Source of the DNA: Heterodontus francisci
Taxonomy: Eukaryota
Length of the DNA stretch: 64,000 nucleotides
NCBI RefSeq assembly: GCF_036365525.1
Contig: NC_090387.1
Location: forward strand, 89,321,691 to 89,385,690
Direction of reading: 5' to 3'
Under the pieces are notes generated by a model. It was not told the origin of the DNA. It saw nothing but the letters and a program-made list of their open reading frames with translations, and searched no databases. Shown here piece after piece: positions 18,277 through 62,428 of this stretch (positions within the stretch are counted from its first letter, which is position 1; each line of letters begins with the position of its first letter). Made by a program: the position numbers and the translations under genes.

Positions 18277-18331
18277 ATGCTGAAGAATAAGCTGGCTCTG
18301 TGTCTCTCAGCTTTGGGGATCGTTTACGCAG
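18277..18331 (+). CDS. Gene 1 exon: signal peptide MLKNKLALCLSALGIVYA
   Basis: Hydrophobic leader, phase-1 donor GCAG|GTGCCT, homologous to the leader at 59516-59570. Confidence 0.8.
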
Positions 18332-21300
18332 GTGCCTGTTAATTTATTTACTACCCAGTCTCACTCAACATAAACATAAACTATGTAGTTATTGTTTTCA
18401 TTCATAGACATACAGCTGCATTAAACTTTTTTTTAGCCTTTTTCTGTCCCTGGGATGTATTATAAGTAATTTTACATTGTTTATATTTAATAGTTTCGGC
18501 AGATACTTCAATCGAAGTGGTTCAACTTCCTGAAAGTCTGGCCTCAGTTCAAGGATCAAACGTTACTTTTCATTGTTCATTACCCTCCATTCAAGATAAC
18601 TCGCAGGTGAGCATCGACTGGTCGAAAGAAGGTGACGATAAATACTTAAGTACAGCGACTGATCAGCGAAAAGTATTTGGTTTCATAAACAAATTCAACG
18701 CGTTTCTTCAGATCGCCAATGTACGCTTCCAGGACGCTGGAATATATTACTGCACTGTCAGTTATCAGGGATACACTACGAGAAGCCATATTGGATCTAA
18801 TTTAACTGTATGGGGTGAGTATGGAGATAGCGCAGAATATACGATGCAATTCTGACTTATAAATTCATGTTAAATGGACCAAGCGTCGGAGAATATTTGC
18901 AATGAATATAACAAATCAGTATACACAACGGAATATTGGAAGTCAAATATTTCGTGCAAGATTTCATGTTACAGATAGTACTTCATTCTTCACATTATCA
19001 AATCTGGGCTACAGAAATATATTTGCCCAGCTGACTGGCAACAAATAAGACCGTTAGTTCAATGTGCCGTTGCTGGAACTACAATAAATTCATTTTCATA
19101 GTTATATATTGCAAATGGGATTGCTGCACACGTAGATAGCGATTATCTTCTCCACAATGCAACATGTAGCAGCGCAATGTTGCGTGCTTTACCATTTTCC
19201 GGAATGTCAAGAGCATGCACAGAAAGTAATTACATTGAAAAAGTCTTGGCAATCTGCAATACTGCCAGAATTTAAATCGGTGCAGGAAAAGGCCGACGAT
19301 TGTTAGTCAAGTTAGAAATTCTTCCTTTTTTCTCATCTGGTCTGCCCCACATACGGCGCTCATTTTTTTAGAATTCACAGGAATACGAGTATTTCCACAC
19401 GTCCACTTAAAAAACGCGGCAAGTGGTCATAAGCAAACGGTAATAATGGTTCGTAAATCCCTAAATCACGTGTGTCTTAATAATTTAATATATGACAGCA
19501 TGTCTATCAATAAGGGTGTTAGTCTTGCTTGTTTTGTGTTCTGTTTTATAGTACCTCCAACTGCAGTGACAATTGTCTCCAGAGAACCTGGAAGGGGGTC
19601 AGCATTGTCCCTGACACTTGTGTGCCAAGCGGCTGCATTTTACCCGGACGTTATTAACTTCGGCTGGTATAAAGATGGCATTGAAGTTACAACCGGGATA
19701 TATGTCATTCAGCAGCGAAACGCAGGCGGCCTGTATGAAGCTCGCAGCTATTTGGAAGAGACACAGCCTGTTCAGAGCGGAACTGTTTATATCTGTCTGG
19801 TATCACACATCACATTTCGGACTCCGTTAACTGTCACGCATGTTATTACATATCCTAAAGCAGGTACGTGGCCAGCACTATAACTGAGATATTCTAACTT
19901 ATTTGTCATCAAAGACCCCATTCAAGTCAATACAAAACATAATTTGTTTTCCGAAAAATTTCGAGAGTATATAAAATTACAGTTGCAGCAAAGATTATGG
20001 CTCTATTATTTTTGCAGTTAAGTGCAAAAAAGACACAAGACCTGGAATTAACCTTCTGCATGTATGAGGTTCTCTTCGCATTACCAATGATACATATACA
20101 GTATTGTTTCCCTCGTTCAAAAATGTCCATTTTCCTATTTTCATGAATGGAATAGCTTTGATTAGATGTTACGGTGGTAGGCGGTAGAGGCGAGGCGATG
20201 CAGAGAATGATTTTACCATTTAGCACGGATCGAGAAAAGAGTGATTATGAGTTGGCAGCCCGTTTTACACTTCGCTTCATTTCCTTACCAATCGACTGCA
20301 ATTGCCTCACTTTAACGGGTTCCGCACTTTAAGAAGGACGCCGAGGCCCTAAAGAGCGCGCAAAGAGATTTACTGAAATGGTAACTGAGTCAAAGATTTC
20401 AATTACATGGAGAGATTAGATAGACACGGATTGTTCTCCTTAGAACAGGGACAGTTAATGCATGATGACAGAGAGGCGTTCAAAATCATTAAATGACTTG
20501 ATAGACGAATTGAGGAGAAACTATTTCCCGTGACAGAAGGTCTGGTACCCAGAATTTACAGACTTAAGGTTATTAATCAATTAACTACAGGGGGCATAGG
20601 GGAGATGTTTTGCTATAGCTGTACAGGAAATTGGTGAGATCACATCTAGAGTATTGTGTACATTTTGATCTCCTTATTTAAGAAAGGATTTAATTGCAGG
20701 TCAGAGAACGTTAATTCGATTGATTCCTGGATGCGAGGGTTATCTTATGATGAAACGTTGGACAGATTGGGTCTGTAGTTATGGGAGTTTAGAAGAATGA
20801 GAGGTGATCTGATTGCAACATATAAGGTCTTGAGGGGACTTGACAGGGTGGATGTGGAAAGGATGTTTCCCCTTGTGGGGAAATACGGGGTCTCCCATTT
20901 AGTAGAGATGCTGAGTTTTTTTTTCTCACAGAGTGTCGTGATTCTGTGGAATTTTCTTCTTTGGACAGCGGTGGAGGCAGTGTCATTGAATGTTTTTTAA
21001 GGTAGAGGTAGACATTTTCTTGGCAAATAAGGGATTCAAACGGTTTCGGAGTTAGGCAGGAAATGGAATTGAGTCCATACACAGATCAGCAATGATCTTA
21101 TGGAATGGCGGTACAGGCCCGAGGGGCAGAATGGCCTACTCCTGCTCCTTGTTCATATGTTTGTATGTTCATTCTTTTTGAAAATCCCTTCCTTTCTCCA
21201 AAAGGAGCTATGATTTCTGAACTCTCGAAAATAGCTTTATAAATAGCCGCCGCTCCAACTAGGTTAATAGAAAATGTATCTTCATTCCTCGGGCTGCAAC

Positions 21301-21597
21301 AGTATCACTAGTATTTCCCGGTTTCATAAATCAGTACTGTATAAAAAGAAACCAGAGATGGTATCGTCGTTAAATCATGGCTGCTAAACTACTTTACTGT
21401 GTAATTATAGAAAATGCGATTAATCCCGCAAATGATTTTTAAGTTTGCGACTGTGTTATACTTTCCACAATGTCTAACATTTTTCTGTAATTTTTTTAGG
21501 CAATTATCTGCTGATTTCTGGATGTATAGGATATAGTCTGATATGTCTACTATTCTTTGTCTTAATTTGGAAGCGACATCAATTAAAGGAAATGTAA
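18277..21597 (+). CDS. IgSF receptor gene 1: leader-V(J-joined)-C1-TM, about 261 aa; join(18277..18331,18494..18814,19552..19863,21500..21597)
   Basis: Four exons joined by GT-AG phase-1 introns give a continuous frame from ATG to TAA. An in-frame upstream ATG at 18229 is a possible alternative start. Confidence 0.85.
18494..18814 (+). CDS. Gene 1 exon: Ig V-set domain with the G strand in the same exon
   Basis: Acceptor taatag|; VVQLPES, NVTFHC, IDW, LQIANVRFQDAGIYYC, GSNLTV; donor TGGG|GTGAGT; 321 nt. Confidence 0.93.
19552..19863 (+). CDS. Gene 1 exon: Ig C1-set domain
   Basis: Acceptor ttatag|; LTLVCQAAAFYPDVINFGWYKDG, GLYEARSYL, YICLVSH (the C1 signatures FYP and YxCxVxH); donor GCAG|GTACGT; 312 nt. 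Confidence 0.93.
20320..21170 (+). mobile_element. CR1 3' fragments in intron 3 of gene 1
   Basis: MRGDLIATYKVLRGLDRVDVERMFPLV (20797-21000) and a CR1-type tail at about 21110-21170. Confidence 0.8.
21500..21597 (+). CDS. Gene 1 exon: transmembrane segment and very short tail (GNYLLISGCIGYSLICLLFFVLIWKRHQLKEM*)
   Basis: Polypyrimidine acceptor ttttttag|, an approximately 21-aa uncharged hydrophobic stretch followed by a KRH stop-transfer motif, TAA at 21595-21597, and donor AG|GTAATT at 21600. Confidence 0.8.
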
Positions 21598-22849
21598 AGG
21601 TAATTTTCCGCCATTTCTGTAAACTTTCATAGTAGCTTTATTATTTATTATTTCTTCACGCGACGTGAGCGTCGTTGGCAAGGCCTGCATTTATTGCCCA
21701 TCCCTATGTCCTTGTCCCATTTTAAACAGTGACCCATGAAAATATAACTTCCTGCTTTGAGAAGGGACAGTAACTTGACTGCACACTAAAATGTACGAAC
21801 GTGGGGCATCATCAGGATAACAAGAATGGTTGGTATTACAACTGGTTCTACATAATAGAATGTGATCATAACTCATAACTGTTGGTTAGTGGATCTGTCT
21901 CTCTCTCTTTCTCTGTCTCTATTCGAATTTCTAACAATATTCCTTCGTAAATATGGTCGTCTCGTTTGAAGTAACATCAAACACATCAACACGGATTCTT
22001 CGATCAAGCCTTGCTTTGTTTAATTGAATGGAGTGCATTGCGTATATAATTTGTCACCTTGACAGCTAGCTGGAAATAATTAAGAATCTCCAGCTTGATT
22101 TTGAGGATCTAATTCTATTCTTTGAAAATGTCCAATTCCTGTGTCTCTAATCATAATCACATTGTATGATTCTGCAGTCCAATTAGAACTTTACACATGC
22201 TTTCTAAAAATATTTAATTCATTTCAGTGCTGCATTCACTCGCTGTTTGCAAGAAATAGAAGAAATGGAATGGGAAGACTTTCGAGCAGGAACAAGAACA
22301 ATTTCGAATAATGTAGATTTCTCTGAAAGATTGCGTCGATTACTTGTCAAATGTGTTTTCGAACTATTAATTCTTCAAAGTGCTAATATGATATCACTCA
22401 TTTGTGGATTGTGAGCTTAAGAATAAGCATTAATCAACCGAATTGAGTATGTTATAAGTTAGAGTAGGTTTGTTTCGTTTCAAATAGACAACCTATTGAA
22501 GTTATTAAGGTTGCCAGATGAGCTTTATTTTTATCTGAAATCACTCGAACCACGACATACTTTTTTTCCCGACAGTCTGTGCAGGGAGCGGGTATCCTTT
22601 TAATAGCTCCAAGAAATCAAAAATGTAACGGCAAGAATATGGGGGAAAAAATGGTTTAAAATCACGTAACCCACAGAAAGGAAACAATTATTAAATCATG
22701 TTACAATTACTAAAACAATACATATTTCCAGGATGGATATTGCTCAGGTTAGCTGCTATCAAGGCCCATTACGCACAGCCTAAAATCGTTATGATGCCAC
22801 AATTTCATTGCAGATTTTAGAAGTTTCGGATCAACAACAAAATGAACAT

Positions 22850-23810
22850 AATACAGAATATAGGGCCAGCAGTTGTACTACGCGTCTGCTCTGCCGTTCA
22901 ATTAACACATGGCTGTTCTGTATGTTACCTCCATATTCACGCCGTGATTCTCTAACCGTTGATAAATTTGCTTCACAAAATCTTATCAAACTTTTGAAAT
23001 TTTTAAATGATCTGTTTTCAACAGCATTTCGAGAGAGTGAATTCCATTATATTCACTCCTGGTGCGTGCATTCCATCCCTGTAATTTAATCTTATTAGCT
23101 CCGGTACTATTCCGGGGAAGCTGTACTGTATCCTGTCTAAGTCCAACATATTATTCCTGGGGTGCATTGCCCAGAACTATATGCAGTAATCCATATGTGG
23201 TATAACGAGAGTTCTGTGCAGTTTTGCCTTAACTTCCAACCGTTTAATATTCCAGAGCTCGTGAGATAAAGGGCATTTTATTTTTTTTAAGGTAGTGTCC
23301 AGTAGATGTAAGTGTTTTTTTAATTTGAACCACAGATCACTTAGGTTTAAAGGAGAGGAATTTAGACTTTGCCGCTTTGATCTCTACCTGCTACAATTTT
23401 GAGTAATCGCTGAATAGGTTAATGTCCCCCTGCAATTCCCTTTTCAAGTGTGCACTATTAACGGAGCTGCACAAATCATGTCGTGCACAAAGTAAAATTC
23501 ACGGTTCTCGATACCCTCATCCAAGTAATGTCGAAATAAATTGATGTGTACATCTGTACTGATGCCCGAGGTCCACCGATAATCAGAACCGGCCAGTTTG
23601 AGTGCATATGCATTACGTATCTTTTCTTTCCTTCATTGAAAGCAATTCTCTCTCAACGCCAATAGGTTGCCTGGAATTCCATGGTCTCTTCTTTTGAACA
23701 ATTGCTTATATGTGAAAATGTGTCCAGTTCCTTCTAGCAACCCATATAATTGACATCTATCGACATTACTTTTTCTTCCACGTTGGATACCTCCTCAAAA
23801 AATCGATTAG
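22850..23810 (-). mobile_element. Old degraded CR1 fragment
   Basis: Minus strand reads LIDFFEEVSNVEEK..IDVNYMG (degenerate LIEFFEEVT...VDVxYMDF). Confidence 0.6.
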
Positions 23811-26800
23811 GATCGTAATATTGCTGATATTATTGCAGAAAACAAAGGTTCATTTTCATTCTCCACTTTAAATGTGCTGTAAATTTCGGTTCTGGACTAA
23901 GGTTTGCACTTCTATTTCCGAATTAATAATGAAACAAGTATATTTCATGGAGTTACGTAGTGTCCTTTATCAGCACAAACGCGAATGCTATTTTGTAAGG
24001 CATGAAACAAGAACTAGAATGTTTGTCTTGTTTTTTTTGTAACAGTAATTAATCGTTCTGGAGAAAATGTACCTGTGGAAAAGAAGCAGATCAATGTTAT
24101 TTTAGTTCACTGATCTTTGTATTCAGTTTCACCGTGTATAATTATCATTTTCATCATTATTGAAAATAACGTTAGCCATTTAAGTGAGCGATGCTTCCAA
24201 ACGACCTTACACAATTTTTGCTCTACCTGTCCAAAATTTTCCGTATTGCGTATATTGACTAGAGTTTTATTCGCGATTTGACACAGCAGTGATTAGTGTT
24301 AGAACAAAGAACAAAGACAATTACAGCACAGGAACAGGCCCTTCGGCCCTCCAAGCCTACGCCGATCCAAATCCTCTAACTAAATCTGTCGCCTGTTTTC
24401 TAACGGTCTGTATCTCTTTGCTTCCTGCCCATTCATGTATCTGTCTAGATACATCTTAAAAGACGCTATCGTGCCCGCTGGCAATGCATTCCATGTACCC
24501 ACCACCCTCTGCGTAAAGAACTTTCCACGCATATCCCCCCTAAACTTTTCCCCTTTCACTTTGAACTCGTCTCCCCTTGTAATTGAAAACCCCACTCTGG
24601 GAAAAAGCTTCTTGCTATCCACCCTGTCTATACCTCTCATGATTTTGTACACCTCAATCAGGTCCCCCCTCAACCTCCGTCTTTCTAATGAAAATAATCC
24701 GAATCTACTCAACCTCTCTTCATAGCTAGCGCCCTCCGTTCCAGGCAACATCCTGGTGAACCTCCTCTGCACCCTCTCCAAAGCATCTACATCCTTTTGG
24801 TAATGTGGCGACCAGAACTGCACGCAGTATTCCAAATATGGCCGAACCAAAGTCCTATACAACTGTAACATGACCTGCCAACTCTTGTACTCAATACCCC
24901 GTCCGATGAAGGAAAGCATGCCGTATGCCTTCTTGACCACTCTATTGACCTGCGTTGCCACCTTCAGGGAACAATGGACCTGAACACCCAAATCTCTCTG
25001 TCCATCAATTTTCCCCAGGACTTTTCCATTTACTGTACAATTCACTCTTGAATTGGATCTTCCAAAATGCATCACCTCGCATTTGCCCTGATTGAACTCC
25101 ATCTGCCATTTCTCTGCCCAACTTTCCAATCTATCTATATTCTGCTGTATTCTCTGACAGTCCCCTTCATTATCTGCTACTCCACCAATCTTCGTGTCGT
25201 CTGCAAACTTGCTAATCAGACCACCTATACTTTCCTCCAAATCATTAATGTGTATCACAAACAACAGTGGTCCCAGCACAGATCCCTGTGGAACACCACT
25301 GGTCGCACGTCTCCATTTTGAGAAACTCCCTTCCACTGCTACTCTCTGTCTCCTGTTGCGCAGCCAGTTCTTTATCCATCTAGCTAGTACACCTTGGACC
25401 CCATGCGCCTTCATTTTCTCCATCAACCTACCATGGGGCACCTTATCAAACACCTTACTGAAGTCCATGTATATGACATCTACAGCCGTTCCCTCATCAA
25501 ACAACTTTGTCACTTCCTCAAAGAATTCTATTAAGTTGGTAAGACATGACCTTCCCTGCACAAAACCATGTTGCCTATCACTGATAAGCCCATTTACTTC
25601 CAAATGGGAATAGATCCTATCCCTCAGTATCTTCTCCAGCAGCTTCCCTACCACTGACGTCAGGCTCACCGGTCTATAATTACCTGGATTATCCCTGCTA
25701 CCCTTCTTAAACAAGGGGACAACATTAGCAATTCTCCAGTCCTCTGGGACCTCTCCTGTGTTTAAGGATGTTGCAAAGATATCTGTTAAGGCCCCAACTA
25801 TTTCCTCTCTCGCTTCCCACAGTAACCTGGGATAGATCCCATCCGGACCTGGGGACTTGTCCACCTTAATGCCTTTTAGAATACCCAACACTTCCTCCCT
25901 CCTTATGCCGACTTGACCTAGAGTAATCAAACATCTGTTCCTAACCTCAACATCCGTCATGTCCCTCTCCTCGGTGAATACCGATGCAAAGTACTCGTTT
26001 AGAATCTCACCAATTTTCTCTGACTCCACGCATAACTTTCCTCCTTTGTCCTTGAGTGGGCCAATCCTTTCTCTAGTTACCCTCTTACTCTTTATATATG
26101 AATAAAAGGCTTTGGGATTTTCCTTAACCCTGTTTGCTAAAGATATTTCATGACCCCTTTTAGCCCTCTTAATTCCTCGTTTCAGATTGCGCCCACAATC
26201 CCGATATTCTTTCAAAGCTTCGTCTTTCTTCAGCCTCCTAGACCTTATGTATGCTTCCTTTTTCCTCTTAGCTAGTCTCACAATTTCACCTGTCATCCAT
26301 GGTTCCCTAATCTTGCCATTTCTACCCCTCATTTTCACAGCAACATGTCTCTCCTGCACGCTAATCATCTTCTCTTTAAAAGCCTCCCATATATCAAATG
26401 TGGATTTACCTTCAAACAGCTGCTCCCAATCTACATTCCCCAGCTCCTGCCGAATTTTGGTATAGGTGGCCTTCCCCCAATTTAGCACTCTTCCTTTAGG
26501 ACCACTCTCGTCTTTGTCCATGAGTATTCTAAAACTTACGGAATTGTGATCACTGTTCCCAAAGTAGTCCCCTACTGAAACGTCAACCACCTGGCCCGGC
26601 TCATTCCCCAACACCAGGTCCAGTATGGCCCCTTCCCGAGTTGGACTATTTACATACTGCTCTAGAAAACCCTCCTGGATGCTCCTTACAAATTCTGCTC
26701 CATCTACACCTCTAACACTAAGTGAATCCCAGTCAATGTTGGGAAAATTAAAATCTCCTATCACCACCACCCTGTTGCTCCTACATCTTTCCATAATCTG

Positions 26801-27690
26801 TTTACATATTTGTACCTCTATCTCACGCTCGCTGTTGGGTGGCCTGTAGTACAGCCCCAACATTGTTACTGCACCCTTCCTATTTCTGAGTTCTGCCCAT
26901 ATTGCCTCACAGCTCGAGTCCTCCATAGTGCCTTCCTTCAGCACAGCTGTGATATCCTCTTTGACCAGTAATGCACTGCTCCACCCCTTTTACCTCCCTC
27001 TCTATCCCGCCTGAAGCATCGGTATCTTGGGATATTTAGTTGCCAATTATGCCCTTCCCTTAACCAATGTTGGTATCATTAGCAAGACATTTGAACATTC
27101 ACAACACGCACACTCCCGCTAGTAGTATACAGATTAGATTATCCACCAATGGTTACAATTTTAAATTAAAACTATTTTTGGGATTCCGTAACATCTCAAC
27201 AAACCGACGCCATTCTTGTCCAAATCTAGAAAATTATTTCGAAATACTATAATCAATATCGAAGGAGACAGAGCGATTACAATTACACAATAAAGATTGT
27301 AGAAATATTTTACGTTTTCGCTTTTATACTTAATTTCTTCCTGCTATGAATTATTTTAATTTATGGCCATTTAAGGTTGGTGAAAAATATAATGTGTAAC
27401 AAAAAATCGCATGAGTAATCATATAATATTTTTGGTTGGTAATACAGTTTTTTCAACATTTCTGCAAGGTTGTGACGAGTTATCAGAACCACTAGGATTT
27501 ATCAAAGAACCGTCAGATATTGCACCCGCAATACAGTCTGATACTGACACCGATGATAATATTCGCAACGGGGGTCAAGAGATTACAATGACGCCGACTA
27601 GCGTTTAGGAATAAGGCATCGCATCTTATCACTTCAACAATCCTGTGCACACTTAATGTGTTTTTAACAGACACTGGATAAAGTATGCGA
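23770..27690 (-). repeat. Copy 2 of the inverted duplication (23770-24300 plus 27062-27690), split by a young CR1
   Basis: Both flanks of the CR1 continue the alignment to 6365-7510 in reverse orientation. Confidence 0.8.
24301..27062 (-). mobile_element. Young 5'-truncated CR1 LINE with an uninterrupted 854-aa ORF2 segment (partial APE endonuclease plus RT)
   Basis: ORF 24380-26944 contains YYRPPNS, GDFN, SDHN, QHGF, GVPQGSVLGP and FADD. 3' tail (TTCTTTG)n at about 24301-24317. Confidence 0.97.
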
Positions 27691-29264
27691 GAAAACTAAG
27701 TGTCTGTCAGATTTTTATTAGAGAGGGGGGATTTAGAATCAGCGTCCAGACTTGTAATATTGAGTTAAACTTTTCTCACCATCCTGCAAACCATACACAT
27801 GTTCGGGTTGATGTCCAAAACTAAAGTGTTGAACAACAAAAGAATATTCGTCAAGTAACAATTTCACAATCTGTAATGAAATCAATTGACATGTAAATCT
27901 AATGCATTGTACTCGTGATATTACATACACACAGCGGGCAGAATTTTACCGGCCCCTCCTGCGGAGGTGCACCAATCCCACCCCATCCCCCCTCCCCCGC
28001 CGCTCGGGGGCGGCACCCAATTAAAAAACGGCACTTACCTCTGCAGATTCTGCAACCCGCCGCCTCTCCTGCGCACTTCCTGATTTTACTTCGAACAAGC
28101 GGCCGTCACGTGCCGTTCCGTTCACGAACAGAAAAGCGGCGGGTCGTCAAAGGCAGAATGTTTCGCGACGGGCGGTAAGTTCGGTTTCAGGGGTCTGACT
28201 CTGCATGCTGGAAGGGGGGAGGGAGGGGAGATGCTCAGGAGTCTCACTCTGCATACTGGAAGAGAGCAGGGAGGGGATGCACAGGGGTATCACTCTACAT
28301 GCTGGAAGGAAGTTGCTGTGTACCCTCCCTCCGTAAACGGTGTACCCTCTCCATGTGTTTGTGTTTGAGCAAGAGAAAAGGCACTCCAGTCGCCCAGTGT
28401 TTGGGGAGGGTGCTACAAAGGGCAGGAGCGTTAAGGTTATAAGGATGGTGGGGAAAATCGCTGCAACTGGTAGGATCTTGATGTGGCCATGCTGTGCCTC
28501 TCTCAGTGTTGGCCAAGATGGGCGATCTCCTCTTTGTTAACATATATATGTCAAACGCTCTGCTCGATTGGGCTGACCGACATTTAGTTTTGGTGTTCGC
28601 AAGTTCTTCTCTTACTTCAAACATCAAAATACTCACCGGGTCCACGTTTAACCAGTGTTTAAAATTTGCAAAAACAACTGTTACCTTCACTTTGTTAGAT
28701 ATATTTGATTTAAAATATTTTCAAAATAATTATGTGAGAGACCTCGGCCGGTTCCCCACGGTTTTCTAAACAGGTAGGTTTGGTAAGTCTGAGCTGCTAG
28801 GCCTAGAGAGATTCGGCATTGTTCTTTCGCAACTTCCTCGTTCTTGATAGGACCACAAACAATAATTCTACCATGAGTATTTGTATAACAATTCCTTTTA
28901 GAACACCGCTGTCCAACATACTGCCCGCGGGACAGGATCCGGCCGCCACAATTGTCCAACGGGACCATGGATGCATTTCAGAGACGAGAAATTTCCCGTT
29001 GTCTTTCTTCAGACTGGATTTTTTATAAATAAAATCGCGCTTTCAGTTTCACAGCTGGCAGCTACTGGGCGCGAGAACAGCGGCAGAGTGCAACTTTGTT
29101 TTAAAAGGCCGCATATCACCCTGAGCTGTGTGAAGTTGGAAAACCGCTGTTCCCGATGACAGCAGCTATCAGCTGTTATCTTGACTTGCGGCTTTCAAAC
29201 AAACTGACCAACCACAAAGCAGGGGAGCTCAAAGATCCCGCTCCCTGCAACTGTCAGGGAGAAA

Positions 29265-29605
29265 GAGAGAGAGCGAGAGAGGTGGAACAGAGAGAGAGAG
29301 GAATCGGGAGAGAACAAAGAGAGGGGAACAGAGTGAGAGGGGCAACAGAGAGGGGGAACAGACAGAAGGGGAAGAGCGAGAGGGACCAGAGATAAAGGGA
29401 CAGAGAGAGGGAGAACAAAGAGAGAGAAGGGACAGAGAGAAAAGGCGCAGAGAGAAAGGGGCCAGAGAGAGAAAGAGGGTGGAAAGAGAGAGGGGGACAC
29501 AGAGAGCGAGGACTACATGGGTGGTGAACAACAGAGGGGGGGGGGGGGGGGGGAACACAGAGAGGGAAACAGAGACAGAGAGAAAGAGAGGGGCAGAGAG
29601 TGATC
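29265..29605 (+). repeat. GA-rich purine low-complexity tract including a poly-G run
   Basis: Imperfect (GAGAGAGGGAACA)-like units; G run at about 29536-29553. Confidence 0.9.
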
Positions 29606-30857
29606 AAGACCATTCCTGATAGATGGAGACCTATCTGGAATACTGCGCATTGCTACAAGAAGTGCGCAGGCAAACATTGACTACTGCACAAGCAAAAAAA
29701 AAGTCGTCTGTCACTAAATTTGTGTCTATTGTACTGACAAGAAAGTGATTCAATAATTAATCTTGTCATTGCAAGCTTCTTCACAAAAATGCACCTTCAT
29801 TGCAGTTTGGATCAAAAGCGAAATACATTTTAATGCCTTTATCTTCCTGAAATTGTCTCACTGCGCCCCCATTTAAAACAAAAAAAAACTGTACTGTAGT
29901 CCCCACGCCAAAAGGTTGGACAACCCTATTGTTATAAATTCGATTTTCGCATTTCACTATGCCGCGACATCCATGGTTTCATCAAACAACGGTGCGATCC
30001 TATCTCTCGGTTATATCAATGTAGGTTTACAATTGTGCAACCAAATACGTGTTTAAGATCATGTTCACTAAGGTGTAACGGATCGGCTATAAATACACTG
30101 TTGAGTACACAATAGGCAGGCTCACAGACTCAGGACAAAGCAAATCCTTAACTATTTCTATAGAATTCCTGCTCCAAGATATTAATCATTATTACAATTC
30201 TGCATATTTTACGGCTGCCATTTACAGTGAACTCTCCAAAGTCTGATCGGAGCAGACTTTAGGATTAATTTCACAGGTGAACAGATCCATAGAATAAAGC
30301 GGTGTAAGTATTTCCATGGCATATGTGTCTATGGATACAAGGGACACATTGCTGTAAATTTATTCTGCTTAGTATTTCTTTGGAAATGGGTTCCTTACTG
30401 CTTTTTCTAGAAATACCAAGCAGGCGAAAACTTCAAAAATATCTTCACTGTGTCGATACACAAAGGAAGTCTTGGTCACAGGTGTTTAAAAAGGACAACT
30501 AATTAGTATTATGGGGGCAAATGTTCAAATGCTGTCGCTATGGTAACGGTTTAACTTCAGATCTATTCCCCAAATACCCGAGGGATGAGCACATAGACGA
30601 ACGTCATTCTGTCCATATAGACCATCCTTCAAGAGAAATACATTGCTCCCACAACATACCATGCAATTACCTTTCGAATATCATTAGAATATTATTCGAC
30701 ACGTCCATAACAGTTATTAATTAATTTGTGCAATACACTTCTTACCAAAAGAAGTCATCAACTTGTCTTCAGACAGTCTGTCCGGCGCCTTGTCCCTTTC
30801 ATTGTTGGTTAATTGTACAGGGGAAACTTTTTGCCACTTATTTTCTTATATCCTATT

Positions 30858-37297: not shown

Positions 37298-37299
37298 TG

Positions 37300-40560: not shown

Positions 40561-40749
40561 TTATGTGTGTATGATGCCTCACATGGATGAAGACCTATAC
40601 CATGTTTCTGAAGTGTACAGTAGTGCCTCTGAAGGATTCAATATTGCACAAATGTTAGCGTAGTTAGATGGTGGGCAAAATACGTTAATGTTGTAATACT
40701 GGTGGTGCAGTGTCAAATCATTATTTTGTCAAATCATTTCATCAAATCA

Positions 40750-42850
40750 TTATTTTCCACCCCATTAGCCTCCACATTCAAAGGATCATCCTCTGCCATT
40801 TTTGCCACGTCCAGCCTGATGCCACTACCAAGCTCATCTTCCCCTCTCCTCCCCTGTCAGCGTTACGAAGGCATCATTCCCTCTGCGACATCCTGGTCCA
40901 CTCTTCCAATACCCGCAACACCTCGTCCCCTTCCCACGGTCCCATGTAATCGCAGGAAGTGTTATATCTGCCCCTTTACCTCCTCTCTCCTCACTATCCA
41001 AGGCACCAAACACTTCTTTCAGGTGAAGTACCGATTTGCTTGTACTTATTTCAATGTAGTACACTGTATTTGCTGTTCACAATGTGGTCTGTTCTACACT
41101 GAGGAGACCAAACGCAGATTGGGTGACTTTGCGGAACACCTCGGCTCAGTCCGAAAGCATGACCCCGAGCTTCCGGTTGCTTCCCATTTAAACACCTCCC
41201 CCGTATGCTCTCATGCCAACTCTCAGGCTTTTCTTCCTACTTCCCCTGGACTATGACGCCACCACTAAACATCAAGCTACTGTCCACAGGAATTTCACTG
41301 ACCTCATCTCCTATCGAGAACGTCCTTCTACAGCTTCCAATCTCTTAGTCCCAGAACCCCAGACGGCCCACTTCTACCACCTTCCTAATATCTACAAACA
41401 GGACAGTCCTGGCAGACCCATAGTTTTAGCCTGTTACTGCCACATTGAACGTATTTCTTCCTATCGACTCAATCTTTTCTTTCCTGCTCCAGTCTCTTTC
41501 CAACTACGTCCGTGACTCTTCTGAAACCCTACGTCATTTTGACAACTTCCAGTTTCCTGGCCCCAACTGCCTCCTCTTCACTGTGGACGTCCAATCTCTC
41601 TACACTTCCATCCCCCAAGAGGGCGGTTTGAGGGCTCTCCACTTCTTTCTTGAACAGAGACCCTACTTGTCCCCATCCACCACTACCCTCCTCCGCCTGG
41701 CTGAACTTGTTCTCACACTGAACAACTTCTCCTTCAGCTCCTCTCACTTCCTTCAAGTAAAAGGTATTATTATCATTATTTTCCACCCCATTAGGCTCCA
41801 CATTCAAAGATCATCCTCCGCCATTTTTGCCACGTCCAGCCTGATGCCACTACCAAACTCATCTTCCCCTCTCCTCCCCTGTCAGCGTTACGAAGGCATC
41901 ATTCCCTCTGCGACTTCCTGGTCCACTCTTCCAATACCCGCAACACCTCGTCCCCTTCCCACGGTCCCATGTAATCGCAGGAAGTGTTATATCTGCCCTT
42001 TCACCTCCTCTCTCCTCACTATCCAAGGCACCAAACACTCCTTTCAGGTGAAACAGCGATTTACTTGTGCTCCTTTCAATTTAGTATACTGTATTCACTG
42101 CTCACAATGTGGTCTCCTTTACATTGGGGAGACCAAACGCAGAATGTGTGACTGCTTTGCGGAACACCTCTGCTCAGTCTGAAAGCATGACACCAAGCTT
42201 CCTGTTGCTTGCCATTTCAACACACACCCCTGCTGTCATGCTCACATATCTGTCCTGGACTTGCTGCAGTGTTCCACTGAACATTAATGCAAGCTCGATG
42301 GACACATCTCATTTACCGATTAGGCACAATACAGCCTGCGGCACTGAACAGTGAGTTCAATAATCAGAGCATGACATACCCATTTTTAGTTTTAGTTTTT
42401 AAATTATTTTTTATTTGTTTATTTTATTTTAGTTTGTTTCCTAATTCTTTTTATTTTCACCAAGTGCCTACCTGCGTATTTTTTCATGTTTGTGTTTTGG
42501 GCCAGGGCTATTTATTTTTCTGTCAATTAACACCCTCTCTGCACATTGTCTTGCAGCACACCAGTAACATACCGTTTGCCTTTGCTCCATGATCTTCTGG
42601 TCAGTTATTCTCTGTGACCCTCTGTCCTATCAACACCTTCCCTGTTGTTATCTCTGACCCATCCCCACTTTATTCGCTTGAACCCTATTACATTTCTAAC
42701 ATTTGCCAGTTTTGATGAAGGGTCATTGACCTGAAATGTTAACTCTGCTTCTGTTTCCACAGATGCCGCCAGACCTGCTGAGTATTTCCAGCATTTATTG
42801 TTTTTGTTTAGGATTTCCAACATCTGCAGTATTTTGCTTTTATTGTTTTT
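40750..42850 (+). mobile_element. Penelope-like element (family A): RT and GIY-YIG fragments with an internal direct repeat
   Basis: RT: PGRPIV, YVRDSSETL, LFTVDVQSLYTSIP, LVLTLNNFSF. Endonuclease: PCNRRKCYICP...NLVYCIHCSQCGLLYIGETKR...EH. About 40750-41220 is repeated at about 41778-42243. Confidence 0.9.
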
Positions 42851-45385: not shown

Positions 45386-45389
45386 TATG

Positions 45390-50324: not shown

Positions 50325-50470
50325 GAACTGTCAGTTCTGATGAAAGCTCACTGACCTGAAACGTTAATTTTGCTTCTCTCTCCAGAGATGCTGGCAGTCC
50401 TGCTGAGTAATTCCAGCATTTTTTTTTTGTTCCAGATTTCCAGCATCTGCAGTATTTTGCTTTTATTTTA
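50325..50470 (+). mobile_element. Penelope-like family A terminal fragment with an intact CTGATGA/GAAA core, flanked by DeuSINE-like remnants
   Basis: CAGTT-CTGATGA-AAGCTCACTGACCT-GAAA-CGTTA at 50332-50366; the downstream sequence matches 15215-15315. Confidence 0.75.
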
Positions 50471-55344: not shown

Positions 55345-56025
55345 AGTCACAGAATCACAGAATAATACAGTGCAAAGGAGGCCCTTCCGCCCATCGTGTC
55401 TGCACCGATGCATTAAAGACACCTGACCTGTCTACCTAATCCCATTTGCCAGCACTTGGCCCATAGCCTTGAATGTTATGACGTGCCAAGTGCTCATCCA
55501 GGTACGTTTTCAAGGATGTGAGGCAACCCGCCTCTACCACCCTCCCAGGCAGGGCATTCCAGACCGTCACCACCCTCTGGGTAAAAAAGTTCTTCCTCAA
55601 ATCCCCCTTAAACCTCCCACCCCTCACCTTAAATTTGTGACCCCTCATAACTGACCCTTCAACTAAGGGGAACAGTTGCTCCCTATCCACCCTGTCCATG
55701 CCCCTCATAATCTTGTACACCTCGATCATCTTCTCTGCTCCAACGAAAACAACCCAAGCCTATCCAAACTCTCTTCATAGCTTAAATGTTCCATCCCAGG
55801 CAACATCCTAGTGAATCACCTCTGCACCCCCTCCAGTGCAATCACATTCTTCCTATAATGTGGCGACCAGAATTGCACACAGTACTCCAGCTGTGGCCTT
55901 ACCAAAGTTCTGTACAACTCCAACATGACCTCCCTGCTTTTGTAATCTATGCCTCGATTGATAAAGGAAAGTGTCCCATATGCCTTTTTCACCACCCTAT
56001 TAACCTGCCCTTTTGCCTTCAGAGA
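55345..56025 (-). mobile_element. CR1/HER1 LINE 3' end
   Basis: ORF 55436-55729 IEVYKIMRGMDRV...FFTQRVV..WNALP; tail CACAGAAT repeats at about 55348-55363. Confidence 0.9.
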
Positions 56026-56539
56026 TCATTAATTGGATAGTTATTCGTAGTTTACCTGGCTACTTTTACCAATTATCAAATAAAAGGTGGCACAGAAAAC
56101 AACATAAGCGGCCGTGCTGCACACTGCACCTAGTTTATGTTGGGTTTTCAGCAGTCACTGAAGTTGCCGCGGGAGACCTAAAGTGTTATCAGTAAATTTA
56201 TGGGCCGTAGAGCTTTAAATATTTCACAATTTCCTGCACTGCGGTTCGAAACATCTCTGCTGTCTTGGTTGAAATGACGTAGATCATTGTGGGAGAATGT
56301 TGCCGCAGCTCTCGCAATGTCCCGCCGTATCTTCTCCGGACGATTAACGCAAACGCTGCACGAACAAGTAACGGCTGGATTTAACCATTCTTGCCATTTT
56401 CCTGGGAGTCTGCCTGTTTCCTGTCAGAGAACTCCGTGAACATTTTATGCTCACTGCCCTGAAATCCACCCTCTCCGGACCAGTCCATGCCCTTTTCATT
56501 ACAGCTTTCCTTAATGTAGGAGGTCCTGAGGCCGGTCCA

Positions 56540-59335: not shown

Positions 59336-59345
59336 ATTGCGAGCG

Positions 59346-59359
59346 GCGCCCTCTTCTGG
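59346..59359 (-). promoter_or_regulatory. CTCF-like motif upstream of gene 2
   Basis: The reverse complement CCAGAAGAGGGCGC matches CCASYAGRKGGCRS at 13 of 14 positions. Confidence 0.4.
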
Positions 59360-59515
59360 CGGATTGACAACTGTTTTAGCAAAGGGACAACCCAAATATT
59401 TTCTGAACCCATACACAGGATGTTACGCTTCTTTGAGGCGTTTGTCGCACTCCGACCCTTCGGCGTTCTTACAAACCATCAGCCACTTCATGATCTGTCC
59501 TTTGAGTGATCCAGA

Positions 59516-59570
59516 ATGTTCGCGAGTGTTGTACTTCAGTGCCTCTCCGTTTTGGGGATCGTATTCACAG
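59516..59570 (+). CDS. Gene 2 exon: signal peptide MFASVVLQCLSVLGIVFT
   Basis: CLSxLGIVxx motif shared with the gene 1 leader; donor ACAG|GTAACA. Confidence 0.85.
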
Positions 59571-62428
59571 GTAACAGTTCCCTCCATACCATAGTTTAGT
59601 TTAGTGATACAACACTGAAACCGGCCCTTCGGCCCACTGTGCCGACCATCAACCACCCATTTATACTAATCCTCCACTAATCCCATATTCCTGCCACATC
59701 CCCACCTGTCGCGATATTTCCCTACCACCTACCTATACTAGGGGCAATCTATAATGGCCAATTTACCTATCAACCTGCAAGTCTTTGGCATGTGGGAGGA
59801 AACCGGAGCACCCGGAGGAAACCCACGAAAACACAGGGAGAACTTACAAACTCCACACAGTACCCGGAATCGAACCCGGGTCGCTGGAGCTGTGAGGCTG
59901 CGGTGCTAACCACTGCGCCACTGTGCTTTCCCATTGAATCTGGTAGTTATTTAGCTTTCCTTTGATATAACATGTTTCATTTTCCTTTGTACATATTCCC
60001 TGATTCCCTCGCGCTTTTTCTTCTGTAATACTATTTTATTAGCATATTTTCCGATAGCTTGCGGCGAAACGTCAGTCAAAGTGAATCAGTACCCTGAGAG
60101 TACGAGCATAAACCTGGGAAGAAATGTTTCCTTTCGCTGCACGCTTCCCATCTTTGAAGACGGCCCACCTGTGAATGTCTACTGGTGGAAGGAGGGTGAT
60201 AATCAATATCTAATCACAGGACAGGATGACAGAAAATTAATTAGCTTTAAGACTGGAATCAGCGGCGTTCTTTGGATAATCAATGTGAGTGTACAAGACG
60301 CAGGAGCATACTATTGCACTGTCGCTCATCGAGGCAAAATAGTTGGAAACGGAACGGGATCCAATTTAGTTGTAACGGGTACGTATGAAAAAAAACGACT
60401 GACATCCCTGTAACTGTAATATTTCACAATTCGGAACATTTCTTGACCGTACTTCGAAGGATTCACATCGCAAATTAAATTCCATTATTTTAGCATGCAT
60501 ACATTCAAATTGCACGTGTCACGGCTGCAATTATTGTTGATATGCTTCACAACATTTCAGCAATATTGATCAAGACAAGCATTATCTCTTAGTTGCTTGG
60601 TTTCCAAAATACACAGGAAACGTTATACAGAAAATGATTGAAGTTAAAACTGCAGTATCATTTACGGAGTTGTGTATCTCGACAGTGTGAGATGCCAGCG
60701 CGATCTGCCGCTCTGAGCACAGATATTGCCCTATTTGAGATATATATTGTCTCCGTTACGAGGGACTGACTGTTTCTATCTGGATTCAGATTTCCGTAGC
60801 TCTAATTTAATCATCTATATGTCAGGATTGTCATTCAAAGGCATTACCATCGCTGAATCCCCACTATCAACATCCTAGGGGAAACCATTGACCAGAAACT
60901 GAACTGGAGTAGCCATATAAATACCGTGGCTGCAAGAGCAGGTCAGAGGCTAAGAATCCTGAGGTGAGTAACTCACCTCCACGCTCCCCAAAGCCTGTGC
61001 ACCATTGACAGGGCACAAGTCAGGAGTGTGATGGAATGCTCTACACTTGCCTGGACGGGTGCAGTTCCGACAACACTCAAGAAGCTCGACACCATCCAGG
61101 ACAAAGCAGCCCGCTTGATTGGCACCCCATCTACAAACATTCATTCCCTCCACCACTGACGCACAGTGGCAGCAGTGTGTACCATCTACAAGATGCACTG
61201 CAGTAGTGCACCAAGGCTCCTTTGACAGCACCTTCCAAACCCGTGACCTCTACCATCTAGAAGGACAAGGGCAGCAAATGCATGGGAACACCATCACCTG
61301 CAAGTTCCCCTCCAAGTCACACATAATCCTGATTTGGGACTATATCGCTGTTCCTTCACTGTCGCTGAGTCAAAATCCTGGAATTCCCTTCCTAACAGCA
61401 CAGTGGGTATACCTACCCCAAATGGACTGCAGCGGTTCAAGAAGGCAGCTCACCACCAACTTCGCAAGGGCAATTAGGGATGGGCAATAAATGCTGGCCT
61501 GGCCAGCGACTCCCACGTCGCATGAATGAATTTTAAAAAGTATCTTTGAAAGGGCATATTACTAACAGCTAAATTTCACATTCTGTAGATTGAGCCTCCG
61601 GTCCAATTTTTCTTAATGATTTTCACCTCCTGTAAATAATGTATCATCCTGGACCTTGGTGCCAATGTCCCTCTAGTTTGGTAAATTATATTTTCTCATC
61701 AGTTCTTATGTTCAACCGGGTCGGCAGCGGTGCCGCGAAACAGGGAATGCAACGCAAATTACATCACGCTCAATTTTCTTTCCCATTTGAATAGAAAATT
61801 GGGAGGGCTGGAAAACGGACGACCCACTCGCTTTCATCCGTTTTTTTTTTTGCCCGGCGGTAACATTGCAACTACTGCCGAAATAATGGCGATACTTGTG
61901 AAAATCCATTTCTACTACTGACAGCGCAAAGTGAACATCCATGCAGTGCCACAAAGACTCATCCCCTCACCGCACCCTCCACTGCCACCCCACCCACCAC
62001 CCCCCACCCCCCGCGACATCCTCCAGTGTAAAGTTCGAAATGGGCTGAAACAAAACGTCGGGTTGTTAACCTTGATTAATGTCCCATTAACGATATTTTC
62101 CTTCATTATTTTTTAGCTCCACCAACTCCACTGAAAATTAACTCTCAGCAACCTGAGAAGGATTCATCTGTTTCTCTGACTGTTGTGTGCGTGACATCTC
62201 CCTTTTATCCAGAGAGTATCAGCTTCACTTGGTATAAGGATGGCAACAAAACTACAACAGGGATAAGTAACGATATTGAACCCAACACCGACGGACTATA
62301 TGAAGCCTCCAGCCGCTTGCAAGAGACGCAGTTTGTCCCGCCCGGAACTGTTTATATCTGCCTGGTCTCTCACAGTAGCCTCCAAAATGCAGCCATTGCC
62401 ACTTACATTGTCACCTATCACAGCACAG
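59516..62428 (+). CDS. IgSF receptor gene 2 (3'-partial): leader-V(J-joined)-C1; join(59516..59570,60058..60378,62117..62428)
   Basis: Three open exons with GT-AG phase-1 introns and the same sizes as in gene 1. The C1 exon ends at a donor, and the TM exon was not found before 64000. Confidence 0.88.
59594..59935 (-). mobile_element. HE1-type tRNA-derived SINE in intron 1 of gene 2
   Basis: Minus-strand A box TGGCGCAGTGG, B box GGTTCGATTCC, and HER1-like tail GGGCCGAAGGGCC...(CTAAA)n. Confidence 0.88.
60058..60378 (+). CDS. Gene 2 exon: Ig V-set domain with a germline J-like GNGTGSNLVV strand
   Basis: Acceptor cgatag|; VNQYPES, NVSFRC, VYWW, LWIINVSVQDAGAYYC; donor ACGG|GTACGT; 321 nt. Confidence 0.93.
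60830..61540 (+). mobile_element. LINE family B 3' fragment in intron 2 of gene 2
   Basis: KKLDTIQDKAARLIG remnant and the family tail. Confidence 0.85.
62117..62428 (+). CDS. Gene 2 exon: Ig C1-set domain
   Basis: Acceptor ttttag|; LTVVCVTSPFYPESISFTWYKDG, NTDGLYEASSRL, YICLVSH; donor ACAG|GTGAGA; 312 nt. Confidence 0.93.

What the first reader, a model, noticed from the sequence alone, without database searches (positions are those of the whole stretch)
18277..62428. Tandem family of non-rearranging, antigen-receptor-shaped V(J)-C1-TM genes in a shark
Seen: two same-strand paralogues with identical exon sizes (55/321/312 nt) and phase-1 introns. Each has a V domain whose J-like G strand is germline-encoded in the same exon, with no RSS or separate J seen, followed by one true C1 domain. 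By hand count they share 47/107 (V) and 51/104 (C1) identical residues with no indels or stops in these exons, implying an old duplication kept under selection. Established: C1 domains are largely restricted to Ig, TCR, MHC/b2m, tapasin and SIRP-type proteins, and a germline-joined VJ-C1 receptor is the proposed pre-RAG ancestor of Ig/TCR chains. Non-rearranging VJ-C1 and NKp30-like genes are known in some ectotherms. Inference: this is part of a diversified, probably uncharacterised innate receptor cluster that automated annotation would likely label SIRP-, tapasin- or light-chain-like.
Basis: partly seen in the sequence, partly recalled or inferred. Interest (0 to 1): 0.82.

Follow-up and report, generated by a model that had tools for sequence, protein, structure and literature searches.

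The report
Shark SIRP-like V-C1 receptor gene pair
Two neighbouring horn-shark genes encode surface receptors built like a single antibody light chain or T-cell-receptor chain but needing no gene rearrangement; one has an inhibitory tail and one has almost no tail, and both belong to a large shark, ray and chimaera family that databases name only automatically.

Summary
Both + strand genes have 55/321/312-nt exons with phase-1 introns. Their V exons are 47/106 identical and their C1 exons 51/103, with no indels or stops.

- **Gene A** is XP_067906076.1 ("tapasin-related protein-like", Heterodontus francisci). One 860-nt spliced contig joins leader, V, C1, TM and a 3'UTR exon at GT..AG borders. 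It ends eight residues after an uncharged TM. A Mustelus orthologue stops at the same codon.
- **Gene B** is XP_067906077.1 ([quoted passage not shown]). Its TM and ITIM/ITSM tail exons lie beyond the window.
- **No rearrangement:** the J-like strand lies inside the V exon and no RSS flanks it.
- **Family:** dozens of V-C1-TM relatives turned up, and every named one is chondrichthyan.
- **No clear outside family:** the family profile scores SIRP-alpha d1-d2, Ig lambda and TAPBPL alike (about 70 bits, against 348-428 within the family). Only the tail and overall design are SIRP-like.
- **Age:** the A/B split predates the shark-ray split, and dN/dS is about 0.35-0.39.

I found no paper on the family, though several relevant journals are not held. 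The scan has already reported this family many times elsewhere in this genome.

The parts
18277..18331 (+). Gene A exon 1: start codon and most of the signal peptide (MLKNKLALCLSALGIVYA), 55 nt, phase-1 donor
   Evidence: Sequence; leader scan; joint 18329->18492 GT..AG in a spliced contig; exact match to XP_067906076.1 = P0174
18494..18814 (+). Gene A exon 2: end of the leader plus a V-set domain with its G strand (HIGSNLTVW) in the same exon, 321 nt
   Evidence: Pfam V-set 46.9 bits; contig piece 18492-18813; no RSS nearby
19552..19863 (+). Gene A exon 3: C1-set domain (FYP...WYKDG...VYICLVSH), 312 nt
   Evidence: Pfam C1-set 45 bits; joints 18813->19551 and 19861->21498, both GT..AG. The contig differs at 19625 (synonymous) and 19831 (Thr to Ile)
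21500..21599 (+). Gene A exon 4: short stalk, uncharged transmembrane helix (NYLLISGCIGYSLICLLFFVLIW), 8-residue tail KRHQLKEM, stop TAA at 21595-21597, two bases before the donor
   Evidence: TM scan; sequence; contig piece 21498-21597 and joint 21597->22226 GT..AG; identical C-terminus in P0174
22228..24199 (+). Gene A exon 5: 3' untranslated exon, whose end was not determined. Contigs cover 22226-22320, 22384-23935 and 24062-24199, the last being the limit of the stretch laid
   Evidence: tables 2 and 8; no similarity to family tail exons
59516..59570 (+). Gene B exon 1: start codon and signal peptide (MFASVVLQCLSVLGIVFT), 55 nt
   Evidence: Leader scan; exact match to XP_067906077.1 = P0219; 36/55 nt identical to gene A's leader exon
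60058..60378 (+). Gene B exon 2: V-set domain with a J-like G strand (GTGSNLVVT), 321 nt
   Evidence: contained exactly in P0219
62117..62428 (+). Gene B exon 3: C1-set domain, 312 nt. The TM and ITIM/ITSM tail exons of this gene lie beyond the window's end
   Evidence: contained exactly in P0219, whose remaining 146 residues (stalk, TM, tail) match nothing in the window

Best explanation
The window holds two tandem members of a large cartilaginous-fish family of non-rearranging type I membrane receptors. Each has a split leader, one short V-type domain with a built-in J-like strand, one C1 domain and a transmembrane helix. The family comes in inhibitory, activating-type and tail-less versions, as mammalian SIRP alpha, beta and gamma do.

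Gene B is an inhibitory member. Its V-C1 ectodomain would bind an unknown ligand. Its tail carries an ITIM (LTYAAV) and an ITSM (TEYAQL), which would recruit SHP-type phosphatases after tyrosine phosphorylation. Both steps are inferred from motifs.

Gene A belongs to an old tail-less lineage. It has the same ectodomain plan, an uncharged membrane helix, and a stop eight residues after the helix that a Mustelus orthologue shares. It most likely acts without signalling of its own, as a SIRP-gamma-like adhesion or decoy receptor, or through a partner held by its well-conserved membrane segment. This too is inferred.

Shown here: the gene structures, the splicing of gene A, the domain types, the family's spread and the age of the duplication. 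Not shown: ligand, cell type and signalling.
For: Gene structure and splicing:
- One 860-nt spliced contig carries four GT..AG joints for gene A.
- Both genes match RefSeq proteins P0174 and P0219 exactly.

Domains:
- Pfam V-set and C1-set both score above their cut-offs.
- The AlphaFold model has mean pLDDT 87.5, with two beta-sandwich domains and a TM helix.

Family:
- The V-profile search of 1.84 billion proteins gave 1155 hits. About 55 are single-V V-C1(-TM) proteins.
- Every member whose name I retrieved is chondrichthyan: about 20 species of sharks, rays and Callorhinchus.
- At least 20 Heterodontus models lie on the same 99.65-Mb record.
- Family tails repeat a unit of the form xTYAxLDL...TVYAQT / TEYAxx. 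Some members have R in the LLISxC membrane motif, and others are tail-less.

Age and constraint:
- Tree: gene A with Mustelus 100/99, sister to the gene B clade that includes batoids 100/99.
- dN/dS is 0.35-0.39.
- Gene A against its Mustelus orthologue is 58% identical overall. It is 23 of the last 29 residues identical in the TM and tail, by my count on the alignment, and both stop at the same codon.

SIRP likeness:
- SIRP-alpha d3 is the best single C1 match in the PDB, at 48 bits.
- The language-model look-alikes of gene B's protein are SIRP-alpha clusters, at 0.97 and 0.96.
- The human SIRP-alpha tail unit printed in PMC5589908, and the ITYADL/LTYADL motifs in PMC5413580, resemble the family's tail unit by eye.
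Against: - No ligand, cell type or signalling was tested.
- RNA support comes from one contig of one run whose RNA nature is only guessed by the tool. Gene B's splicing was not checked with reads.
- The ectodomain is no closer to SIRP than to Ig light chains or TAPBPL, all at about 70 bits.
- Structural neighbours tie at Z 14-16.5 across the B7, nectin, Neph and butyrophilin families.
- ITIM/ITSM tails can arise convergently. In gene B the first tail unit is degenerate (APYAEL, and H in place of Y in RTAHVQV).
- Gene A has neither a tail motif nor a charged membrane residue, so its mode of action is a guess.
- 'Chondrichthyan only' rests on the names I could look up. Several representatives were never named.
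Confidence: 0.8

Rival explanations
1. The genes are true SIRP orthologues or co-orthologues. On this view the shark family is simply the cartilaginous-fish SIRP locus, expanded and with one C1 domain instead of two.
For: - Most automatic names are SIRP-alpha- or SIRP-beta-like.
- SIRP-alpha d3 is the best single C1 match, at 48 bits.
- The top named look-alike clusters are SIRP-alpha.
- The tail units look like the SIRP-alpha unit printed in PMC5589908.
- The inhibitory, charged-TM and tail-less trio mirrors SIRP alpha, beta and gamma.
Against: - SIRP-alpha d1-d2 (70.2 bits) ties with Ig lambda (70.2) and TAPBPL (71.2).
- There is one C1 domain, not two.
- No tetrapod SIRP came up in either word search.
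- The only bony-fish 'SIRP-like' hits are weak and built differently.
Confidence: 0.3
2. They are germline-joined immunoglobulin light-chain genes, which are known in cartilaginous fish, or relatives of the non-rearranging shark antibodies UrIg and UrIg2.
For: - The leader / VJ exon / C1 exon layout is the same.
- Several family members are auto-named Ig lambda-like.
- Foldseek's top hits are Fab light chains, at about E 1e-16.
- UrIg2 tops the PDB list for the C1 exons.
Against: - Both proteins have a transmembrane exon, and gene B has an ITIM tail.
- Identity to light chains is only about 20-26%.
- The UrIg2 score is a sum over three C1 domains of about 17-24 bits each.
- UrIg has three C1 domains and is secreted. 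UrIg2 has nine to eleven (PMC12227049).
- The C-strand motif is WWKEG / WSKEG, not the WYxQ of Ig and TCR V domains (the latter from my own knowledge).
Confidence: 0.03
3. They belong to the PRARP family: non-rearranging V-C receptors with inhibitory tails, described in chicken and found in other jawed vertebrates.
For: The general plan is similar, as I recall the abstract of Fu et al. 2019, which is cited in PMC10751288.
Against: - No bony-vertebrate member of this family appeared in three protein searches, whereas PRARP is reported from bony vertebrates.
- Earlier scan notes place PRARP-like genes on other pieces of this genome, with relatives from sharks to birds (unchecked).
Confidence: 0.05
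4. Gene A is a decaying copy: an inhibitory receptor that lost its tail to a stop codon and is drifting towards pseudogene status.
For: - The stop lies two bases before a splice donor that still joins to a downstream exon. This looks like a truncated longer gene.
- Gene A's J-like motif has lost one glycine.
Against: - The same stop position and the same modified G strand occur in the Mustelus orthologue, so the state is old.
- The ectodomain is intact, with dN/dS about 0.35-0.39 against gene B.
- The TM and tail are more conserved than the ectodomain.
- The gene is transcribed and correctly spliced.
Confidence: 0.07

Closest known systems
SIRP family (SIRP alpha, beta and gamma; SIRP alpha is also called PTPNS1/SHPS-1)
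   Same: - A non-rearranging V domain with a J-like strand, followed by C1-set domains, in a type I membrane protein.
- Inhibitory, charged-TM and tail-less versions exist within one family.
- Tail units of the form xTYAxL...TEYAxx resemble the SIRP-alpha unit printed in PMC5589908.
- SIRP-alpha d3 is the best single C1 match in the PDB, and SIRP-alpha clusters are the nearest named look-alikes.
   Different: - There is one C1 domain instead of two, and the V domain is shorter, with hardly any C'-C''.
- The ectodomain profile score is no better than for Ig lambda or TAPBPL.
- The family is expanded to at least 20 genes on one horn-shark chromosome.
- Orthology, synteny and CD47 binding are untested.
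UrIg and UrIg2 (non-rearranging shark VJ-C1 genes; PMC12227049)
   Same: A single-exon VJ domain with a split leader, C1-type constant domains, no rearrangement, and occurrence in elasmobranchs.
   Different: - UrIg is a secreted homodimer with three C1 domains. UrIg2 has nine to eleven C domains.
- Here there is one C1, a TM helix, and either an ITIM tail or almost none.
- Per-domain similarity is only generic, at 17-38 bits.
Immunoglobulin light chains and TCR chains
   Same: A V(J)-C1 two-domain chain with the same exon plan and phase-1 introns. Fab light chains are the best Foldseek matches, and Ig lambda scores 70.2 bits with the family profile.
   Different: - There is no RSS and no separate J segment.
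- There is a TM with an inhibitory or absent tail, not secretion or CD3-dependent charged TM residues.
- Identity is about 20-26%.
Tapasin-related protein (TAPBPL) and B7H6 / B7 family
   Same: Both have V plus C1-type domains. TAPBPL V+C1 scores 71.2 bits, and B7-H6 is a top two-domain structural neighbour at Z 16.3. Several members carry these automatic names.
   Different: The family lacks TAPBPL's large N-terminal domain. Its scores tie with unrelated V-C1 proteins. B7 family members lack the SIRP-like ITIM tail units.
Other multigene paired Ig-type receptor families (teleost NITR, mammalian KIR/LILR, chicken CHIR)
   Same: Tandem, rapidly duplicating clusters that mix ITIM-bearing, charged-TM and truncated members (from established knowledge).
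   Different: Those families use V plus I/C2 or C2-type domains. A true C1 domain next to the membrane is unusual.

Membership tests
SIRP family | N-terminal V-set domain with a J-like G strand, encoded unrearranged in one exon | tested here: met
   Pfam V-set 46.9 and 35.0 bits. The motifs GTGSNLVV (gene B) and HIGSNLTV (gene A) lie inside the V exon. No RSS.
SIRP family | Two membrane-proximal C1-set domains (V-C1-C1 ectodomain) | tested here: not met
   There is one C1 exon per gene, and gene A's C1 is spliced directly to the TM exon. P0174 and P0219 each have a single C1.
SIRP family | Cytoplasmic tail with paired tyrosine motifs that bind SHP-1/2 (alpha type), or a short tail with a basic TM residue (beta), or a short tail without charge (gamma) | tested here: inconclusive
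   Gene B's tail has LTYAAV and TEYAQL, plus degenerate APYAEL and RTAHVQV. Gene A is gamma-like, with an uncharged TM and an 8-residue tail. Only the motifs were seen; binding was not tested. The likeness to the human unit (PMC5589908) was judged by eye.
SIRP family | Sequences cluster with SIRPs to the exclusion of other V-C1 proteins | tested here: inconclusive
   With the family profile, SIRP-alpha d1-d2 scores 70.2 bits, Ig lambda 70.2, kappa 66.6 and TAPBPL 71.2. SIRP-alpha d3 alone scores 48.0, the best single C1. No tree with reference sequences was possible.
SIRP family | Conserved synteny with tetrapod SIRP loci, and binding of CD47 | not testable with these tools
The window itself holds only repeats besides the two genes.
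Rearranging antigen receptors (Ig/TCR) | Separate V and J segments flanked by recombination signal sequences | tested here: not met
   The G strand is in the V exon, and the transcript joins V directly to C1. No heptamer-spacer-nonamer lies near either V exon.
UrIg / UrIg2 | A VJ domain followed by three or more C1-type domains; secreted (UrIg) or very long membrane form (UrIg2) | tested here: not met
   A single C1 domain and a TM. The family definition comes from PMC12227049.
PRARP | Sequence relation to the chicken PRARP genes, and presence in bony vertebrates | not tested
   The paper and its sequences are not held. No bony-vertebrate member was found, which argues against membership but is not a direct test.
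C1-set immunoglobulin domain | Match to the C1-set profile above its curated cut-off, and the FYP...W...YxCxVxH signature | tested here: met
   45 and 52 bits against a cut-off of 21. The structural best matches for this domain are MHC class II membrane-proximal domains, at Z 15.2 and rmsd 1.8.

The most novel reading that the evidence does not exclude
The family is neither a SIRP offshoot nor a light-chain offshoot. It is instead a surviving cartilaginous-fish lineage of the ancestral non-rearranging VJ-C1 membrane receptor from which SIRPs, TAPBP-type proteins and the Ig/TCR chains diverged. This would explain why its ectodomain sits at equal distance from all three. In addition, the conserved tail-less gene A lineage would pair through its V domain or membrane segment with ITIM-bearing neighbours. 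That would make a two-chain receptor that foreshadows antigen-receptor heterodimers.
Probability: 0.1. Interest if true: 0.85.

Novelty: new variant of a known kind. Interest (0 to 1): 0.55.

Why it matters
Non-rearranging VJ-C1 genes are the proposed starting material for antibodies and T-cell receptors. Recent shark work on UrIg and UrIg2 (PMC12227049) shows that the field is actively looking for them.

This family gives cartilaginous fish a large membrane-bound set of such genes, with inhibitory, activating-type and tail-less members. It sits about equally far from SIRPs, light chains and TAPBPL. It therefore offers many natural sequences for rooting V and C1 trees, and for asking whether SIRP-type "paired receptor" logic was already present in the first jawed vertebrates.

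In practical terms, the inconsistent automatic names (tapasin-related, Ig lambda, SIRP, B7H6 ligand, MHC class II) will mislead gene-family counts in shark genomes until the family is curated.

What this window adds is an old, conserved tail-less lineage (gene A) lying beside a recently expanded inhibitory lineage (gene B).

Tried and rejected
- **Further copies or relic exons in the window:** tblastn with both domains and with 16 family tails found nothing beyond the two genes and gene A's TM exon.
- **Gene B's downstream exons:** the 1.5 kb after its C1 exon is retroelement sequence, and the rest lies outside the window.
- **Tail-only word search** for SIRP-alpha-like tails: only 33 candidates, all from the family. 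This search was too insensitive to be informative.
- **Pfam on tails:** only a sub-threshold match to the SHP2-interacting adaptor SIT, at 15 bits against a cut-off of 27.6.
- **Structure searches:** Foldseek is swamped by Fab light chains. The wide VIA search ties many two-domain IgSF families at Z 14-16.5. Neither discriminates.
- **Trees against SIRP, Ig, TCR, NKp30, B7H6, UrIg and PRARP:** not possible, because no tool supplied those reference sequences as usable ids and I did not type sequences from memory.
- **Papers:** no paper on a shark SIRP-like family was found. The PRARP 2019 and UrIg 2023 papers are not held.
- **Reedfish 'SIRP beta-1-like' protein:** rejected as a bridge. It is V-V-x-C1 and scores only 41, 25 and 21 bits per domain.
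- **Joined exon model:** I did not build or search one. Exons were searched one by one by reference, and the full-length proteins used are database entries returned by the tools.
Full report
**What is there**

Reading the sequence gives two + strand genes with the same plan.
- Gene A: leader 18277-18331, V exon 18494-18814, C1 exon 19552-19863.
- Gene B: leader 59516-59570, V exon 60058-60378, C1 exon 62117-62428.

The exon sizes are 55, 321 and 312 nt in both genes. All borders are AG/GT and all introns are phase 1.

The four domain exons translate without stops. They align without gaps, at 47/106 identical residues for V and 51/103 for C1. tblastn with all four exons finds only these two copies in the 64 kb.

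Pfam calls the first domain V-set (46.9 and 35.0 bits, cut-off 26). It calls the second C1-set (45 and 52 bits, cut-off 21).

**Not rearranging**

The G strand with its J-like motif lies inside the V exon: GTGSNLVV in gene B, and HIGSNLTV in gene A, which has lost the first glycine. A scan of both strands for a heptamer, a 12- or 23-bp spacer and a nonamer found one weak site, at 5034, which is next to no V exon.

**Transcript**

One public run (X1, coded, kept as contigs, RNA nature only guessed by the tool) holds an 860-nt contig. It lies on 18492-18813, 19551-19861, 21498-21597 and 22226-22320, with about 30 further letters reaching back to the leader exon. Its four joints all have GT..AG ends.

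This confirms the three exons and adds two more.
- A TM exon at 21500-21599, which I had predicted from hydrophobicity.
- An untranslated exon from 22228, covered by further contigs to at least 24199.

The stop codon (21595-21597) sits two bases before the last coding donor. The protein therefore ends KRHQLKEM, eight residues after an uncharged helix (NYLLISGCIGYSLICLLFFVLIW).

The contig differs from the window at two places in the C1 exon, one synonymous and one Thr to Ile. These look like allelic differences.

The two sister runs of the same sample show nothing on the exons.

**Identity of the genes**

A profile of the two V exons was searched against 1.84 billion representative proteins. 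It gave 1155 hits, about 55 of them single-V proteins with a C1 domain and usually a TM. Name look-ups and two word searches then identified the genome and both genes.
- Gene A is XP_067906076.1, "tapasin-related protein-like" of Heterodontus francisci. It has 261 residues and is identical to my exon model, including the C-terminus.
- Gene B is XP_067906077.1, [quoted passage not shown]. It has 374 residues and contains the leader, V and C1 exons exactly.

Gene B's remaining 146 residues are a stalk, a TM (CYLLVSASAGGVVVLLVIGLIIAKRC) and a tail. The tail reads APYAEL, RTAHVQV (H where relatives have Y), LTYAAV (ITIM), TEYAQL (ITSM) and VIYTEP. These exons are not in the window.

I built no joined exon model. 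The full-length sequences used are database entries that the tools returned.

**The family**

Every relative whose name I retrieved comes from a shark, a ray or the chimaera Callorhinchus, about 20 species in all.

Their names are a lottery: SIRP-alpha-like, SIRP-beta-1-like, Ig lambda- or kappa-like, tapasin-related-like, NKp30-ligand(B7H6)-like, CD276, PD-L1-like, MHC class II beta-like and TCR-beta-like.

At least 20 horn-shark models lie on the same 99.65-Mb record. The accession numbers following genes A and B run on consecutively, which suggests, but does not prove, that the tandem array continues.

The members fall into three tail types.
- Long tails repeating a unit such as VTYAALDLSGSKKT...NTEYAEIQ or ...ERTVYAQTK.
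- Short tails with an arginine in the conserved LLISxC membrane motif (activating type).
- Short tails with no charge, like gene A.

**Age and constraint**

A maximum-likelihood tree of 52 ectodomains (210 columns) pairs gene A with a Mustelus asterias protein at 100/99. It makes this pair sister, also at 100/99, to a clade with gene B, four close horn-shark paralogues, catshark, bamboo and epaulette sharks, and three batoids. With the rest of the family as outgroup, the A/B duplication predates the shark-ray split. Gene B belongs to a recent horn-shark expansion and is 92% identical to its nearest paralogue.

Between A and B the introns cannot be aligned. dS is 1.0-1.3, which is near saturation and therefore rough, and dN/dS is 0.35 for V and 0.39 for C1.

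Gene A and its Mustelus orthologue are 58% identical overall. They match in 23 of the last 29 residues (my count on the alignment), share the modified G strand (xIGSNLTVW) and stop at the same codon. The tail-less state is therefore old and maintained, not recent decay.

**What it is related to**

Here the evidence is deliberately split. With one and the same 33-member family profile, the outside V-C1 proteins tie.

| Target | Bits |
|---|---|
| Family members | 348-428 |
| TAPBPL V+C1 (mammal) | 71.2 |
| SIRP-alpha d1-d2 | 70.2 |
| Ig lambda V+C | 70.2 |
| Ig kappa V+C | 66.6 |
| UrIg2 part-V+C1 | 55.6 |

The apparent lead of UrIg2 in the single-exon searches is a sum over three C1 domains of about 17-24 bits each.

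The AlphaFold model of gene A's protein is confident (mean pLDDT 87.5) but does not discriminate.
- Foldseek returns Fab light chains.
- The wide structural search ties Rst/Neph, B7-H6, PD-L2, butyrophilin and nectin two-domain modules at Z 14-16.5.
- The C1 domain alone looks most like MHC class II membrane-proximal domains.
- The V domain alone looks most like NCAM d1, CD79b, TCR V-beta and IgNAR V.

The model also shows hardly any C'-C'' strands, so this is a short V domain.

Four things point specifically to SIRP, none of them decisive.
- SIRP-alpha d3 is the best single C1 match (48 bits).
- The nearest named clusters by language-model features are SIRP-alpha (0.97 and 0.96).
- The family shows the inhibitory, charged and tail-less trio.
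- The tail unit resembles, by eye, the human SIRP-alpha unit printed in PMC5589908 and the conserved ITYADL/LTYADL motifs in PMC5413580.

I did not feed the human peptide to any tool.

**Verdict on kind**

The genes work like SIRP-type paired receptors and are shaped like a single antigen-receptor chain. Membership of the SIRP family proper is not established. One defining feature, two C1 domains, is not met, and sequence clustering is inconclusive.

- Germline-joined light chains and UrIg-type antibodies are excluded by the TM exon, the tail and the single C1 domain.
- PRARP could not be tested, because the paper is not held. The absence of bony-vertebrate members argues against it.
- Earlier notes of this scan place PRARP-like genes elsewhere in the genome (unchecked).

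**Earlier findings**

The scan has already reported this same family many times on other DNA of this genome. The reports run from 12.4 Mb before to 3.2 Mb beyond this window, and on another piece. They use the same 'SIRP-like, only automatically named' reading. MHC notes all lie on other pieces.

I treated these as leads. My own searches agree with them. For this window they add the conserved tail-less lineage and the quantitative tie between SIRP, IgL and TAPBPL.

**Limits**
- Reference sequences for a proper cross-family tree were not obtainable.
- RNA support rests on one contig.
- The literature library lacks the journals where such a family would most likely be described.

Noticed in passing
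window 24380-26944, minus strand: An uninterrupted 854-residue LINE ORF with endonuclease and reverse-transcriptase domains (RVT_1 123.9 bits, Exo_endo_phos_2 43 bits) lies just downstream of gene A's 3' exon. Further RT fragments lie at about 34.3-36.6 kb, 55.4-56.0 kb and 62.7-63.2 kb, so most of the 40 kb between the two genes is retroelement sequence.
   Followed up: partly
window about 59740-59930 (intron 1 of gene B): This stretch reads, by eye, like a tRNA-derived SINE in reverse orientation (its complement contains GGCGCAGTGGTTAGCAC). It helps explain why gene B's leader intron is 487 nt against 162 nt in gene A. ARAGORN and Rfam do not call it.
   Followed up: partly
window 40702-41256 and 41445-42182, plus strand: Two nearby ORFs share a long near-identical segment (...CNRRKCYICPFTSSLLTIQGTKH.FQVK...CS.CGL.Y..ETKRR...). 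By eye it resembles the GIY-YIG endonuclease end of Penelope-like retroelements. Pfam gave no hit at E 0.001.
   Followed up: partly
window 19625 and 19831 (gene A C1 exon): The transcript contig differs from the assembly at two bases. One is a synonymous C>T in the Cys codon and the other a C>T that changes Thr to Ile at C1 residue 93. These are probably allelic variation between individuals or haplotypes.
   Followed up: partly
window 20600-21200 and 21600-21800 (introns of gene A): Very high summed contig depth in all three runs (tens of thousands) marks abundant repeat families inside gene A's introns. These are not signals from the gene itself.
   Followed up: no
window 29195-29613, minus-strand ORFs: A CT/AG-rich low-complexity stretch gives overlapping Ser/Leu/Pro-rich ORFs. 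It is probably a simple repeat, not a gene.
   Followed up: no
family-wide; gene A residues 233-238 (window about 21509-21526): A conserved LLIS(G/R/A)C motif with a cysteine sits at the outer edge of the membrane helix in most family members. Activating-type members have arginine at the G position. The cysteine might mediate dimer formation. This was not tested.
   Followed up: no
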